NCBI GenBank assembly: GCA_963514005.1
Contig: OY740804.1
Location: 5,642,001 to 5,706,000, forward strand
Origin: Raja brachyura
Taxonomy: Eukaryota
Reading direction: 5' to 3'
DNA: 64,000 bases
Below the pieces are notes generated by a model. It had not been told where the DNA came from, did no database searches, and saw only the letters and a list, made by a program, of their open reading frames with translations. The position numbers were made by a program, and so were the translations under genes. This document shows, piece by piece, positions 24,538 to 63,528 of the stretch; the stretch's first letter is position 1, and every line of letters begins with the position of its first letter.

Positions 24538-24574
24538 ATGTTGGTGCCAATTCTTCTCATTTGTTTTTTGCCCG
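24538..24574 (+). CDS. Gene A exon 1: signal peptide MLVPILLICFLP
   Basis: ATG, 37 nt, G|gtgagt phase-1 donor; conserved across five paralogs. Confidence 0.88.
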
Positions 24575-24779
24575 GTGAGTAACATTCAGAATTAGACATT
24601 CTGATAAATAGTATTACTTTGCGTGTTTCGCACAGTTTCCGCTGCAGAGATGGTTAAAGCATGCCTAGACACGCAAAGCTGCAAAATGTTCAGCATGTAC
24701 TGTAATAATATGGCTATATTGGAATATAGTCACGTAAACTCCCTCAGTCTATAACATGATACCACAGAAGTTATCACCT

Positions 24780-25147
24780 ATCTATCTGACTCATATTTTG
24801 CTTGGGCAGCTTACAACCCAGCGGCATGATTATTGATTTTTCTAACTTCAAGTACCCCTTGCATGCCCTCTCTCGCTGTCCCTCCCCGCCTTAGTCCTCT
24901 TGCTAACTTCACCTCTTTCATTCATTCGGTGTCACCTCATCCCCAGCCAACAATGGACCATTGTGGACTCCACCTTTCTGGAGTTATCGATTCAGGCTCT
25001 GCTTTGTTCTGTACTTTCCCATACCTCTAGTTTGCCCCTCCCCGACTCACCGTCTGGTGAAGGGTCTCGACCCAAAATGTCTCCTATTCAAATTTCTCCA
25101 AAGATGCTACCTGACCCGCTGAGTTAGTCCAACATTTTCTGTCTATC
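24780..25147 (+). mobile_element. Penelope-like element 3' fragment
   Basis: ctcatattttgcttgggcagcttacaacccagcggcatg matches the 3' end of the Penelope ORFs at 59600 and 60300; degenerate hammerhead-like motif near 25053. Confidence 0.7.
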
Positions 25148-25736
25148 TGAGACCATTGTTGATTGCGAAATAAACACAATGGGAGTTTATTTTCTGAATG
25201 TTCATCTAAGTGATATAATCAAAGAGTAGTGGCATCCATTCCATTTGTAAACACTGTAACAGTTCCCTCGTTCTAATTGAAAGCAGTAGTGAAATAACAT
25301 TGACTCCAAATAGCTTATCTCCAAATTATACTACACCGATTGTTCAATGTAAAATGTATGAAAAATGAAATGGCTCCGGAACATGGATGAATAAATAAAA
25401 TGAGGAGCTTGACACGCGTTGACAGCATTCTCGACATTAGTCATATATTTTTAATTTTAGCCTAATCTTGTTGTACTCCACGATAACCCTTCTGCTCCCT
25501 TTGTCAAATGGAATTTCTGCCAATGTCACTGATTGTCAAAGCCATTGTTTATGGTTTATGGGATGATGGGTGGAAGATGAGGAGGGGGCGGGGAAAATTG
25601 AGACAATGCCAGTGCGGTATGGGAAAAAGACAAGGGGATAAACGAGGTTCAAGTGAATTAGATGGAGATAACTGGTGGTGAGTTGAATATCGGGCAACAG
25701 TACCTCCGACATTGCCGCACTCCGTCTGTGTGCGGC

Positions 25737-26012
25737 AGGGTGGCGCAGGGGTAGAGTTGCGGTCTCACAGCACCAGAGACCTGGGTTCCATCCGCACGAT
25801 GGGTGCTGTCTGTACGGAGTTTGTCCGTTCTCCCTGTGACTGTGTGGGCTTTTTCCGGCTGCTCCGGTATTCTCTCGCACCCCCAAAACGTGCAGGTTTG
25901 TGTTAAAATGAATATTGTCACCCGCGTGTGTAAGAGAGTGCTCGTGTATAGGGATCGCTGGTTGGCGTAGAGTAGGTGGGCCGGAGGGCCTGTTTCCACG
26001 CTGTATCTCTAA
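25737..26012 (+). mobile_element. V-SINE (HE1-like)
   Basis: tRNA-like head, V-domain core, 3' ggcctgtttccacgctgtatctctaaa. Confidence 0.8.
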
Positions 26013-26084
26013 AGTGACGTATAAAGAGGAGAGAGGGGGAGGACATCCTTGTGATTGAGGTAGTGCAGCGTTGGTTCGCGAGAT

Positions 26085-26550
26085 TGATCCCTGGGATGGC
26101 GGGACTGTCATGTGAGGAAAGATTGAAAAGACTAGGCTTGTATTCACTGGAGTTTAGAAGGATGAGGGGGATCTTATAGACACATATAAAATTATAAAAG
26201 GACTGGACAAGCTAGATGCAGGAAAAATGTTCCCAATGTTGGGTGAGTCCAGAACCAGCGGCCACAAATAAAGGGGAGGTCATTTAAGACTGAGCTGAGA
26301 AAAAATGTTTTTACCCAGAGAGTTGAGAATTTATGGAATTCCCTGCCACAAAGGGCAGTGGGGGCCAAATCACTGGATAGATTTAAGAGGGAGTGGATAG
26401 AGCTCTAGGGGCTAGTGGAGTCAAGGGATATGGGGACAAGGCAGGCACGGGTTATTGATAGCGGCCGAGCAGCCATGATCACAATGAATGGCGGTGCTGG
26501 CTTGAAGGGCCGAATGGCCTCCTCCTGCACACATTTTCTATGTTTCTATG
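26085..26550 (+). mobile_element. CR1 3' fragment
   Basis: ggagtttagaaggatgaggggg...cagagagttg; ends in tttctatgtttctatg. Confidence 0.85.
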
Positions 26551-26934
26551 TTTAAAGAAAAGTCTAAAGTCAGTACTTCAATGCCATGCATGGAGAGGGA
26601 GAGCGGATCGCGGGATTACCGAGGAGGCTTTGTCCCCCCTGCACCCAACCCCACCAGCTCTCTACCATTACCAGCCCCGCACCACTCCCACCCCCTAATC
26701 CCAACACTCTTCCAGCTATCCGAACCCTACCCAATTAGTCTGAAGAAAGGTCCTGGCCAGAAACCTCTCTTGTCCATTCCCTCCTCTGCTGAGTTACACC
26801 GCGCCTTGTGTTTGGCTCAAGGGTAAGTGAATATCCAGACACGGGCTGGACCATTTGGGCCTTCGTTTGATAGGATAAGAGGGGGTGGGCCGACAATGTG
26901 TTCAGTAGATTTGTCATCTTCATTTTCCTCTCAG

Positions 26935-27258
26935 TTTCAGGAGCACTGTGGGCAAAGAGATGGGTAAGAGGTGCTTTGGGAAGAGCGATCGCAATCGATT
27001 GTCACTATGGCGCAGAGCACCGCTCACACGCAAAATATTGGTGCGGTGGAAGGAGTCGCCAGTGTACAGTATTAGTGGAAACAAATGGACAACTCCATGG
27101 TCGGAGTGGAAGAGTGTCAATCACAGATAACCCGGCACGAGGAATATTTACTGTGACTGTGGAGGATCTTCACTCCGGAGATACAGGATGGTACAACTGT
27201 GGAATTAATACACCTGGCAAGGATCCATTGTTTAACGTTCAACTCAAAGTAACAGACG
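26935..27258 (+). CDS. Gene A exon 2: CD300/pIgR-type Ig V domain
   Basis: ctctcag|TTTCAGGA; IDCHY, KYWC-x6-C (extra C-C' Cys pair), RVSITDN, FTVTVEDL, DTGWYNCGI; G|gtacgt; 324 nt, phase 1-1. Confidence 0.93.
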
Positions 27259-61437: not shown

Positions 61438-61488
61438 AACTGCAAGTGAAAAGCAGTGACACTGACATTTATTTCCTTGTTCCAACAG

Positions 61489-61538
61489 GTCATGAATATT
61501 CTTGAGAAAAAATCGATAAGATCCAATTACTCAGCAAG
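61489..61538 (+). pseudogene. Gene C exon 4: short stalk with a nonsense codon at the conserved Cys (GHEYS*) and wrong exit phase
   Basis: actgacatttattt...caacag acceptor homologous to genes A and B; TGA at 61503-61505; AAG|gtaaac donor. Confidence 0.65.
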
Positions 61539-61663
61539 GTAAACCACAATTTTTCAAATGAAGTTACAACGTACTAATTGCTGGCGTTTTGATTGGGAAT
61601 CCATTATTCGGGAGAAATTTGTGCCTTCGGCAATAAATGCCGTGAGAGTATAGATTTGCATGC

Positions 61664-62015
61664 ACAGTGGCACAGCATGTAGAGCGACAGCCTCACCACG
61701 CCACGACGTATGTTCATTAGGTGAAGTCTCTGTGTGGTCTGCATGTTTTGCCTTTAATTATGTTGGTTTCATTTAAGTGCTCCAGTTTCCTCCCAGCTCC
61801 CAAAGATGTGCCAGTGGTAAATTACACCATGTGTGCAGGAGAGCGGTTGAATCTGTGAAGAGTGGGTGGGGCGGGGGAGGGAGGGTGTTGGACGGTAGTG
61901 GTAGTTGATGAGAAAGTAGGGGAAATAAAAATGGGATTTACACATGATCCGTGTGAATGTATTTGACTGTTGGCAAAGACCTGAAGGGCCAAATAGCCTG
62001 TTTCTACACTGTGTT
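61664..62015 (+). mobile_element. V-SINE (HE1-like), old
   Basis: acagtggcacagc head; gtgctccagtttcctccca core; gcctgtttctacactg tail. Confidence 0.6.
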
Positions 62016-63005
62016 TCTCTATGGGTCTGTGATCCAATGAAACCAAATATTGAAGCATAATAAAATTGTGTACGTTCAGCCATGATCACTTTGAATGGTA
62101 GTGCTGGCTCAAAGGGCTAAAAAGGCCTACCCCCGCGCCTATTGTTTATTGTCCATTGTTTCAAGCAGGACACCAAATATATATTTATCTCTTAAATATT
62201 CTTTAATAATATGTATATAACTTGAAAAACAGTTATTAGTTAACTTATCAGAAGCGGAATTGCACTGGGTTTACATCTCATTTTGTTGTGTACATGCTTG
62301 GATGATAAGAACAAGTTCCTCCATTTGCTGCTTTTCACATAGAGCTCCCTACGGTATTCACCATGACTTCTCCATCACTAACCCCACCCCATGCTGTGAG
62401 ATGAATATAGTTTCCAAGCCCAAATCTTTCACTTTAGGTTTGCTGTGACTTGCTCTGGTGTAGTGCTGATAGGAAAATGCATTATGAATTATGGGCTAAG
62501 ACATCCCTCTTGATATCACTTGTGGCAACACCTTGCCATTGATGGGGTCATGCACCAAAAAATCGCTGGTGCAAAATGTGAGAAAACAGTGTTGAATCAG
62601 ACGGAATACAGTGAACTGAGTTAACTGACGCTCTCTTACACATTGAACCTTGAAACCTCTCCCGTTGGGTTTCTCCAGTATTTTGTGTCTATCTACTCTG
62701 TATGCACTGAATTCCCTGCTTCATCTCATGACTTATTTCACTGTCTTCTCCGAATCCATATAACCGTGTAATCTCTCATTCCCAGCCTTGTAGTCATACT
62801 CCAGCAATAAGGTCAGTAAATGGTGATCATAAGTTGTCCCCCACACCGCCCCAGTGCGTTCTTTCTCCCAGCTGATCTCCATTGACTCTGCTGCTTCGCC
62901 CCGCTCCACTTCACCAAGATTATGAAGCAAATAACAGGTATATGTTTCAAAGATAAACCGTCTCGTTTTCTCCCATTGATTCTGTTTCTCTTGCTCTTTG
63001 CCCAG

Positions 63006-63096
63006 TTACATCTCATGGAAAGAGGGGCGCTGGCTGTTCTTTCTCCCGCTTGTGATCTGGAGTATCTCAACCGCGGTGTTTACAAGAGGCTCTAAG
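63006..63096 (+). pseudogene. Gene C exon 5: Arg-containing TM exon (YISWKEGRWLFFLPLVIWSISTAVFTRGSK)
   Basis: Paralog of 30596-30686, same length and AG|gtaggt donor. Confidence 0.82.
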
Positions 63097-63480
63097 GTAG
63101 GTTTTATTGTCATCGTGTTTATAAATTATAGGAGCAGAATTAGGCCATTCAGCATATCATATCTAATCCGCTCCAATCACGGCTGATCTGTCCTTCCCTC
63201 TAGATCCCATTCTCCTGCCTTCTCCCCACAACCAATGACATCCTATTTATCAAGAATATGAATATCTCCGCCTTAAAAATATAAATTCATGTGGATGGAT
63301 ACAAAATTGCTGGAGTCTCTCGGCGGAACAGGCTGCATCTCCTCTGCGATTTGGCTGGGCCTCCACAGCCTCCTGTGGCAATAAAATCCACACATCCAGA
63401 CAGCAGTGTGTTGGGAGTGGTCGGTTCAAATAAAGCGTCGTTCCCACTGTCAGTGAGTCTGATCACATTGTCTTTTGCAG

Positions 63481-63528
63481 AAACGCGATGAATCACAACC
63501 TTGCCACTCGACACACCAATTACAATGA
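63481..63528 (+). pseudogene. Gene C exon 6: short tail KRDESQPCHSTHQLQ*
   Basis: cttttgcag acceptor; paralog of 30977-31024. Confidence 0.72.

What the first reader, a model, noticed from the sequence alone, without database searches (positions are those of the whole stretch)
24538..63528. Paired activating/inhibitory CD300/MDIR-like receptor cluster in a cartilaginous fish
Seen: three tandem genes share a homologous leader-V-C2-stalk ectodomain but use two unrelated signalling modules. Genes A and C have a W-K-x-G-R-W transmembrane exon (Arg at the outer end) plus a 15-aa tail. Gene B has a neutral TM, extra tail exons and an ITIM remnant. Established: an N-terminal TM Arg is how LILRA, OSCAR, GPVI and FcalphaRI pair with FcR-gamma. 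Activating mammalian CD300s and TREMs more typically use a mid-TM Lys with DAP12 and have one V domain. V+C2 CD300-like receptors (MDIRs) are known from skate. Inference: this is a paired-receptor family under birth-and-death evolution, joining a CD300-type V domain to LILR-style FcR-gamma coupling.
Basis: partly seen in the sequence, partly recalled or inferred. Interest (0 to 1): 0.8.

Follow-up and report, generated by a model that had tools for sequence, protein, structure and literature searches.

The report
Skate MDIR immune receptor gene cluster
This is part of a skate's cluster of MDIR immune receptor genes, a family described in 2006: one activating-type gene looks intact, its inhibitory-type neighbour has lost its inhibitory motifs, and the third is a dead pseudogene.

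Summary
Three tandem + strand genes share leader, CD300/pIgR-type V, FCRL-type C2 and stalk exons.

- Genes A and C end in a W-K-x-G-R-W transmembrane exon plus a 15-aa tail.
- Gene B has an uncharged transmembrane exon and further tail exons.
- The family is already known. Homologues include clearnose-skate MDIR2 and MDIR5, and many automatically annotated shark and ray genes. MDIR5 has almost the same TM and tail as gene C.

The state of the three genes differs from the "paired" picture.

- Gene A (310 aa) is open throughout, but needs a GC splice donor after the C2 exon.
- Gene B (333 aa) is open up to its last exon. There a TGA, a frameshift and a TAA have destroyed the inhibitory tail, leaving an out-of-frame IFYATV. 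A spliced contig from a related organism joins its stalk, TM and tail exons at the predicted borders.
- Gene C is a pseudogene: ATG changed to ACG, two 1-bp deletions, Cys changed to Phe, and a stop in the stalk.

The N gap lies in gene C's first intron.

Coupling to FcR-gamma through the Arg is plausible. The motif resembles the NxxR TM module and is conserved across sharks and rays. It was not tested here.

This is a new member of a known kind and of moderate interest.

The parts
24517..24574 (+). Gene A exon 1: leader (ATG 24517, second Met 24538), ends in phase 1 at a GT donor
   Evidence: 89% identical to the leader of Rhinoraja P0005
26941..27258 (+). Gene A exon 2: V-set Ig domain of CD300/pIgR type, four conserved Cys
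   Evidence: Pfam V-set 3.3e-13; PDB CD300A 4.4e-20, with stronger summed multi-domain matches to pIgR
28145..28459 (+). Gene A exon 3: C2 Ig domain of FCRL type plus a CHYV segment; the donor is GC (AAAG|GCAAGT)
   Evidence: 86% identical to Rhinoraja P0046, whose model ends the exon at the same VIKG
29160..29262 (+). Gene A exon 4: stalk (LEYHCETLTTQW...), phase 1 in and phase 2 out
30596..30686 (+). Gene A exon 5: TM exon YMIWKVGRWMLFALLVVWTISVTLYTRKPQ
30977..31024 (+). Gene A exon 6: 15-aa tail RRDEPYPHIMAPEVK plus TGA
32873..32909 (+). Gene B exon 1: leader MWVPILLICSLP
37151..37465 (+). Gene B exon 2: V-set domain
   Evidence: Pfam V-set 3.1e-14
39092..39415 (+). Gene B exon 3: FCRL-type C2 domain
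40285..44323 (+). DIRS-like retroelement (reverse transcriptase plus tyrosine recombinase) inserted in gene B's intron 3
   Evidence: the Pfam hits are below the curated cut-offs but agree with one another
45535..45652 (+). Gene B exon 4: stalk (EYKYYCGRPTTES...)
   Evidence: spliced contig of run X1
46290..46414 (+). Gene B exon 5: uncharged TM ...TYIIGMAVVLPLAFVASLFWYLKRKNR
   Evidence: spliced contig of run X1
46910..46956 (+). Gene B exon 6: 47-nt cytoplasmic exon EFKWSTYYRDGSGDNQ
   Evidence: the length and bin depth of the unaligned part of the X1 contig fit it; aligns by eye with ETKRSTSQGEANNETQ of P0043, 6 of 16 identical
47503..47673 (+). Gene B last exon (the X1 contig runs to at least 47673): EIVVLEEIDDI, then TGA 47536-47538; frameshift near 47548; ITIM remnant IFYATV 47592-47609; TAA 47610-47612. 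Decayed likeness to inhibitory tails runs on to about 47780
53179..53215 (+). Gene C leader remnant with ACG where A and B have ATG
54451..54640 (.). Assembly gap, inside gene C's intron 1
55257..55558 (+). Gene C V exon: 1-bp deletion about 30 nt in, and a 12-bp deletion at the G strand
57384..57703 (+). Gene C C2 exon: 1-bp deletion near 57483 and Cys changed to Phe (YYFTAS)
   Evidence: 83% identical to the second C2 of MDIR5
61489..61538 (+). Gene C stalk remnant: HEYS, then TGA where the Cys stands, then a frameshift
63006..63096 (+). Gene C TM exon YISWKEGRWLFFLPLVIWSISTAVFTRGSK (open)
   Evidence: close to the MDIR5 TM
63481..63528 (+). Gene C tail exon KRDESQPCHSTHQLQ plus TGA (open)

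Best explanation
The stretch is a piece of a large MDIR (modular domain immune-type receptor) gene cluster of a skate-like batoid. Each gene is built from modules: a leader, a CD300/pIgR-type V domain, an FCRL-type C2 domain, a Cys-bearing stalk, and one of two signalling ends.

- Gene A carries the activating-type end. Its TM helix has an Arg about four residues in from the outside (IWKVGRW...), followed by a short acidic tail.
- I infer that gene A's product reaches the surface and signals by pairing this Arg with the TM Asp of an ITAM adaptor of the FcR-gamma/CD3-zeta kind, as NxxR-TM receptors do.
- Gene B carries the inhibitory-type end (neutral TM, multi-exon tail). Its last exon has decayed, so its product, if made, is a 333-aa receptor with a 31-aa tail and no ITIM. 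It would be a silent or decoy form rather than an inhibitor.
- Gene C is a dead copy of an MDIR5-like activating gene.

The cluster evolves by duplication, exon shuffling, retroelement insertion and gene death.
For: **Shown**

- Exon structure and phases: gene A sums to 930 nt (310 aa) and gene B to 999 nt (333 aa). All acceptors are AG and all donors GT, except one GC donor in gene A.
- V domain: Pfam V-set; PDB CD300A 4.4e-20, CD300c and CD300f, and pIgR.
- C2 domain: the best solved relative is FCRL5 domains 4-9, with the shared pattern VSxPVL...CE..GSxPI.Y...YYCTA.N.
- Family: 62 homologues, all but one from sharks and rays, including Rostroraja eglanteria MDIR2 and MDIR5. The MDIR5 end, SYISWKVGRWLLFLLLVIWSISTAVFTRGSKKRDESEPRHSAHELQ, is close to gene C's.
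- Two signalling modules family-wide: 27 database homologues have the W-x-x-x-R-W TM with a short tail. At least 14 more have a neutral TM and ITIM-like tails. No activating-type TM without the Arg was seen.
- Gene B splicing: a 678-nt contig of run X1, about 96% identical, joins 45534-45650, 46288-46413, about 46 nt, and 47501-47673. The bin depth places the 46 nt at 46910-46956.
- Gene B tail decay. Gene C lesions.
- C2 tree: A pairs with Rhinoraja P0046 (support 99). C groups with the second C2 of MDIR5 (support 97). B sits on a long branch.

**Established knowledge**

- NxxR TMs of LILRA2, PIR-A, NKp46, GPVI, OSCAR, FcalphaR and Xenopus XFLs associate with FcR-gamma (PMC2413239).

**Inferred**

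- Adaptor pairing. Only 17 hydrophobic residues follow the Arg before the cytoplasmic TRK. A helix that spans the membrane must therefore include the Arg.
Against: - There is no RNA evidence for gene A. Its C2 exon ends in a GC donor, and a nearby GT (28450) would break the frame.
- The Rhinoraja model of gene A's closest relative (P0046) uses a different leader and does not continue into a stalk and TM.
- Genes A and C have Lys, not the Asn of NxxR. Only P0006, P0011 and P0053 have N-x-x-R.
- TM similarity to LILR/OSCAR-type TMs could not be scored: the PDB search found nothing.
- Published surveys found no FcR-gamma gene in cartilaginous fish (PMC4016189, PMC13337447).
- From memory, the 2006 MDIR paper listed MDIR5 as lacking typical signalling motifs.
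- The X1 contig comes from another organism, or possibly from a paralogue. The tool rates that run as 'RNA? (probably DNA)'.
Confidence: 0.72

Rival explanations
1. All three genes are dead or dying. Gene A is also non-functional because its C2 exon has lost the GT donor, and the cluster segment is a graveyard next to working MDIR genes elsewhere.
For: - Gene A has a GC donor at 28460, where B and C have GT.
- The Rhinoraja counterpart model P0046 has an aberrant 3' end.
- LINEs of about 10 kb and an unused intact leader lie upstream.
- Two of the three neighbours are damaged.
Against: - All six gene A exons are open over 930 nt, with conserved Cys and matching phases.
- AAG|GCAAGT is the usual form of working GC donors (my own knowledge).
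- Gene A's C2 sits on a short branch and is 85% identical to its Rhinoraja relative.
Confidence: 0.15
2. The conserved Arg is an interfacial residue that sets the position of the TM or binds lipid head groups. It does not pair with an adaptor, and these short-tailed forms are non-signalling receptors or decoys.
For: - The Arg lies near the outer end of the hydrophobic stretch.
- From memory, the 2006 paper did not count MDIR5 as activating.
- Surveys found no FcR-gamma in cartilaginous fish (PMC4016189).
Against: - The Arg is present in every activating-type TM I retrieved, from hexanchiform, carcharhiniform and orectolobiform sharks and from batoids. In each it pairs with a short tail, in contrast to neutral TMs with ITIM tails.
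- A positive charge at the outer end of a type I TM goes against the usual charge distribution.
- NxxR receptors with an Arg at the same depth do need FcR-gamma (PMC2413239).
Confidence: 0.2
3. Gene B is still a working inhibitory receptor. On this view, the stop and frameshift in its last exon are assembly errors or belong to one allele.
For: - The related transcript (X1) has one more base than the window in this exon.
- All upstream exons are intact.
Against: - Contigs of run X2 match the window without any difference across 47120-47899 (table 8). X2 may be the very sample the window was assembled from, so this is not independent.
- At least three separate lesions (TGA, frameshift, TAA), plus internal deletions against MDIR2-type tails, would all have to be errors.
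Confidence: 0.08

Closest known systems
MDIR family of the clearnose skate (Rostroraja eglanteria MDIR2 and MDIR5; Cannon et al. 2006, cited in PMC3031540)
   Same: - The same V plus C2 modules and the same stalk with Cys.
- MDIR5 ends in YISWKVGRW...TRGSK KRDESEPRHSAHELQ, close to gene C's end. Its second C2 is 83% identical to gene C's C2.
- MDIR2 has the neutral TM and the multi-ITIM tail that gene B's decayed tail aligns to.
   Different: - The species differs (identities of 54-84%).
- MDIR5 is V-C2-V-C2, while the window's genes are V-C2.
- Gene B has lost its ITIMs and gene C is dead.
- Gene A's nearest relative is an unnamed Rhinoraja gene, not a named MDIR.
CD300/CMRF35 family and pIgR domain 1
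   Same: - V domain with the extra Cys pair (KYWC...QC) and the DTGWYxCG motif.
- PDB E-values of 4e-20 to 2e-18 to CD300A, CD300c and CD300f, and stronger summed hits to pIgR.
   Different: - CD300s have a single V domain and no C2.
- From my own knowledge, activating CD300s carry a TM Lys or Glu, not an Arg at the outer end.
- pIgR has 4-5 V-like domains and a transcytosis tail.
FCRL proteins (FCRL5 domains 4-9, FCRL4)
   Same: The membrane-proximal C2 domain shares the pattern VSxPVL...CE..GSxPI.Y...YYCTA.N. FCRL5 is the best solved relative for both A and B.
   Different: - FCRLs have no V domain of CD300 type.
- The single-domain match is modest (i-E 8e-4 for B).
- Orthology is not shown.
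NxxR (TM1) receptors that pair with FcR-gamma: LILRA2, PIR-A, NKp46, GPVI, OSCAR, FcalphaRI, Xenopus XFLs (PMC2413239)
   Same: - Arg a few residues into the outer end of the TM, a short cytoplasmic tail, and partners in the same family with a neutral TM and ITIMs.
- Some batoid members read N-V-G-R or N-M-G-R (P0006, P0011, P0053).
   Different: - Genes A and C have K-x-G-R. Shark members have D-V-I-R or S-V-L-R.
- No statistical TM homology could be shown, and no adaptor test was possible.

Membership tests
MDIR (modular domain immune-type receptors of skate) | Significant sequence similarity to named MDIR proteins | tested here: met
   - A search with the skate homologue P0006 returned MDIR5 (E 2.9e-166) and MDIR2 (E 9.2e-106).
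- tblastn of MDIR5 and MDIR2 on the window hits the V, C2 and TM exons of A, B and C, and gene C's tail.
MDIR (modular domain immune-type receptors of skate) | Multigene family with activating-type and ITIM-bearing forms built from shuffled Ig modules | tested here: met
   - Three tandem genes use two TM modules.
- Family-wide, 27 members have an Arg TM and at least 14 a neutral TM with ITIM-like tails.
- Scan notes report more genes on both sides of the window (unchecked).
CD300/pIgR-type V domain | V-set fold with best matches to CD300 or pIgR, and the second Cys pair | tested here: met
   Pfam V-set. PDB CD300A 4.4e-20 and pIgR. Four Cys are at conserved places in A and B.
CD300 family proper | A single V domain directly on a stalk, with no C2 domain | tested here: not met
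   A, B and C each have a C2 exon between V and stalk.
FCRL-type C2 domain | Best solved relatives are FCRL domains, and the motif is shared | tested here: met
   FCRL5 is the top hit for A (2.3e-41 summed) and B (2.2e-23 summed). FCRL4 scores 8e-6 for A. The next families score 1e-4 or worse, or are generic I-set hits.
NxxR TM1 module (pairs with FcR-gamma) | Arg near the outer end of the TM helix, with a short tail | tested here: met
   IWKVGRW is followed by 17 hydrophobic residues, then TRKPQ and 15 aa.
NxxR TM1 module (pairs with FcR-gamma) | Asn three residues before the Arg | tested here: not met
   Genes A and C have Lys. Among database homologues, Asn occurs in P0006, P0011 and P0053.
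NxxR TM1 module (pairs with FcR-gamma) | Physical and functional association with FcR-gamma | not testable with these tools
   This needs co-expression and an Arg mutant. I could not check whether this genome has an FcR-gamma gene, because I held no adaptor sequence to search with.
Inhibitory (ITIM) receptor | At least one in-frame [SIVL]xYxx[ILV] in the cytoplasmic tail | tested here: not met
   Gene B's tail reads KRKNR-EFKWSTYYRDGSGDNQ-EIVVLEEIDDI-stop. IFYATV is in another frame, behind the TGA.

The most novel reading that the evidence does not exclude
Shark and ray MDIRs combine a pIgR/CD300-type V domain, an FCRL-type C2 domain and an NxxR-like Arg TM. If so, the FcR/FCRL/LILR-type signalling module predates the split of cartilaginous and bony fish, and an FcR-gamma/CD3-zeta-type adaptor to pair with it would have to as well. 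Published surveys hold that pIgR, FcRL and FcR-gamma are absent from cartilaginous fish, so this would contradict them.
Probability: 0.35. Interest if true: 0.6.

Novelty: new member of a known kind. Interest (0 to 1): 0.35.

Why it matters
The locus shows birth-and-death evolution of a paired-receptor family in a cartilaginous fish. Within 39 kb it holds one intact gene, one whose inhibitory tail has decayed while its upstream exons stay open, and one dead gene. Retroelements sit in the introns and stray exons lie between the genes.

The wider point is the conserved outer-end Arg in all activating-type members from sharks and rays. It gives a concrete, testable handle on whether ITAM-adaptor coupling of the FcR-gamma kind existed before bony fish. 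Two papers I read (2014 and 2026) state that FcRL, pIgR and FcR-gamma are absent from cartilaginous fish. The MDIR domains found here sit awkwardly with that.

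Tried and rejected
- **IVYEEL ORF piece (48224-48307) as gene B's ITIM exon: rejected.** It needs a phase that the TM exon does not supply. The related transcript shows no cover there and splices to 46910-46956 and 47503 instead.
- **GT at 28450 as gene A's C2 donor: rejected.** It runs into a stop in the stalk exon.
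- **Motif and local-alignment searches for gene C's stalk.** These first found nothing. A weak hit then led to the remnant at 61489-61538.
- **PDB search with the TM exon:** no hits.
- **The 2006 MDIR paper (PMC3701310)** is not held. What I say of its content beyond PMC3031540 is from memory.
- **Paper searches for FcR-gamma or DAP12 in sharks** gave nothing useful.
- **Scan-note searches for an adaptor gene** gave only an unchecked CD3-zeta note.
- **No run on record as RNA holds the stretch I queried, in gene B.** The splicing evidence therefore comes from a related organism's contigs.
- Two searches used uninterrupted window ORFs, with the 'region' option set on the exon part.
- **Big representative search:** not used, because the family was already clear.

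Full report
**What is there**

The window has one N run, 54451-54640. Self-comparison shows three sets of homologous + strand exons:

| Exon type | Gene A | Gene B | Gene C |
|---|---|---|---|
| Leader | near 24.5 kb | near 32.9 kb | near 53.2 kb |
| V | near 26.9 kb | near 37.1 kb | near 55.2 kb |
| C2 | near 28.1 kb | near 39.1 kb | near 57.4 kb |
| Arg TM | near 30.6 kb | none | near 63.0 kb |

A search for W[KR].G[KR]W finds exactly two sites, at 30606 and 63016.

**Gene A**

- The exons are 24517-24574, 26941-27258, 28145-28459, 29160-29262, 30596-30686 and 30977-31021, followed by TGA.
- They sum to 930 nt, or 310 aa (303 aa from the second Met, at 24538).
- Phases match throughout, and all acceptors are AG.
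- The one oddity is the donor after the C2 exon, AAAG|GCAAGT, where genes B and C have G|GTAAGT and G|GTAGGT. The GT ten bases upstream would run into a stop in the stalk exon.
- The Rhinoraja model P0046 is 86% identical in C2 and ends the exon at the same VIKG.

**Gene B**

- The exons are 32873-32909, 37151-37465, 39092-39415, 45535-45652 (stalk), 46290-46414 (uncharged TM, ...TYIIGMAVVLPLAFVASLFWYLKRKNR), 46910-46956 and 47503 onward.
- They sum to 999 nt, or 333 aa.
- A DIRS-like retroelement (reverse transcriptase plus tyrosine recombinase) fills 40.3-44.3 kb of intron 3.

No run on record as RNA holds the stretch. One contig of run X1 does support the splicing:

- It is 678 nt long, about 96% identical to the window, and comes from a different coded organism than the perfectly matching X2.
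- It lies on 45534-45650, 46288-46413 and 47501-47673, with about 46 letters between the last two pieces.
- X1's depth in bin 46801-47000 equals 46 nt of that contig, which places the missing piece on the predicted 47-nt exon.
- X1 gives no cover of the unique intron DNA, so the contig is a spliced transcript. The tool itself rates the run as 'RNA? (probably DNA)'.

This supports stalk-TM-tail splicing of gene B's counterpart at the predicted borders.

**Gene B's tail is dead**

- With phase 0 the last exon reads EIVVLEEIDDI and then TGA (47536-47538).
- Inhibitory relatives read EIPTREESAARVNLQ... (MDIR2) or EISVLEGNHVDTDLQQ... (P0043) at the same place.
- From about 47548 the likeness to their tails continues in another frame: ...ARLVANNVHTIFYATV against ...ADRMANNDSGIMYAAV.
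- It then meets TAA (47610-47612) where the relatives have Q or K, and has internal deletions further on.
- The product therefore has a neutral TM and a 31-aa tail without an ITIM.

There are three disabling lesions in about 270 nt of tail, against none in about 970 nt of upstream coding sequence. This suggests the ectodomain and TM are still kept by selection. That is an inference from small numbers. Gene B's C2 also sits on a long branch.

**Gene C is a pseudogene**

- The leader has ACG for ATG (53179-53181).
- The V exon (55257-55558) is 1 nt short about 30 nt in, and lacks 12 nt at the G strand.
- The C2 exon (57384-57703) lacks 1 nt near 57483, and its second canonical Cys is Phe.
- The stalk remnant (61489-61538) reads HEYS-TGA where relatives have LEYSCE, then changes frame.
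- Inverted retroelement-like copies fill 58.8-61.1 kb.
- Only the TM and tail exons remain open.

**The gap**

The gap lies in gene C's intron 1, and no family exon abuts it. Frame is therefore not at stake.

**What the modules are**

- *V domain.* Pfam V-set. PDB CD300A 4.4e-20, CD300c 8e-20, CD300f 2e-18, and stronger summed matches to pIgR.
- *C2 domain.* Best match is FCRL5 domains 4-9, then FCRL4. Other families are far behind or generic.
- *Homologues.* All but one come from sharks and rays, under automatic names such as CMRF35-like, pIgR-like, FCRL5-like and CXADR-like. They include Rostroraja eglanteria MDIR5 and MDIR2.
- *MDIR5.* It ends in SYISWKVGRWLLFLLLVIWSISTAVFTRGSKKRDESEPRHSAHELQ, close to gene C's TM and tail. 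So this TM module is already in the literature's sequences.

**Family pattern**

- Of 65 proteins held, 27 carry the W-x-x-x-R-W TM with a short acidic tail. Batoids have K/N/S/T-V-G-R. Sharks have D-V-I-R or S-V-L-R.
- At least 14 more have a neutral TM with ITIM-like tails such as IMYAAV and IVYADV.
- I saw no activating-type TM without the Arg.
- In the C2 tree, A pairs with a Rhinoraja gene (support 99; 85% identity). C groups with the second C2 of MDIR5 (support 97). None of the three window genes is another's nearest relative. This fits old duplications with later losses, that is, birth-and-death evolution.

**Mechanism**

- Only 17 hydrophobic residues follow the Arg before TRK. A membrane-spanning helix must therefore start before the Arg, which puts it about four residues in from the outside.
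- That is the geometry of the NxxR TM1 module of LILRA2, PIR-A, NKp46, GPVI, OSCAR, FcalphaR and Xenopus XFLs. Those receptors bind FcR-gamma (PMC2413239).
- Some batoid members have the literal N-x-x-R. Genes A and C have K-x-G-R.
- I therefore favour pairing with an FcR-gamma/CD3-zeta-type adaptor (about 0.6 for some ITAM adaptor, less for FcR-gamma itself).
- None of this is tested. Surveys report no FcR-gamma, FcRL or pIgR in cartilaginous fish (PMC4016189, PMC13337447).

**Verdict**

The pair in this window is not a working activating/inhibitory pair.
- The design is not new: it is MDIR.

Lengths were summed from exon coordinates.

Noticed in passing
window 10938-11108 and 12208-12244 (+): An intact extra leader exon (ATG, MWILILLISYLP, GT donor) lies with a conserved 5' exon about 1.1 kb upstream of it. 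The Rhinoraja model P0046 joins the counterparts of these two exons to a V-C2 pair of gene A's type. It may be an alternative first exon of gene A or the orphan of a lost gene.
   Followed up: partly
window 887-943 (-): An inverted leader-like exon with ATA in place of ATG. The flanks 3-805 repeat 11147-12055 directly, and 874-1075 is an inverted copy of 12050-12256.
   Followed up: partly
window 13301-23090 (-): LINE-type retroelements (one open frame of 1285 aa, one of 393 aa, and further fragments) make up the AT-rich block between the orphan leader and gene A.
   Followed up: no
window 56290-56700 (-): Inside gene C's V-C2 intron, on the opposite strand, lie ITIM-like motifs in two different frames (SIVYATL and VSYSDV). 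This looks like a stranded, decaying inhibitory tail exon. The scan noted it separately as s1-880987.
   Followed up: partly
window 48224-48307 (+): An AG...GT-bounded open piece, EFEGLNKTCTSMDKDGIIVYEELSNDCR, carries a perfect ITIM consensus about 0.6 kb downstream of gene B's ITIM remnant (47592-47612). The related transcript does not cover it, and the phase does not fit the TM exon. It may be a relic or chance.
   Followed up: partly
window 51026-51211 (+): A second copy of the conserved 5' exon-like element (39% aa identity to the start of P0046; 82% DNA identity to 10974-11064) lies about 2 kb upstream of gene C's leader remnant.
   Followed up: no
window 30596-30679 and 63006-63089 (+): The database models P0003 (Pristis) and P0004 (Hemitrygon) read the Arg TM exon in another frame (LHDMESG...). 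This suggests mis-modelled or frame-shifted isoforms in public annotation.
   Followed up: no
window 47501-47673 (+), run X1: The related transcript has one base more than the window in gene B's last exon. If it lies near 47548, that organism's copy may lack the frameshift seen here. The tool did not show where the extra base lies.
   Followed up: no
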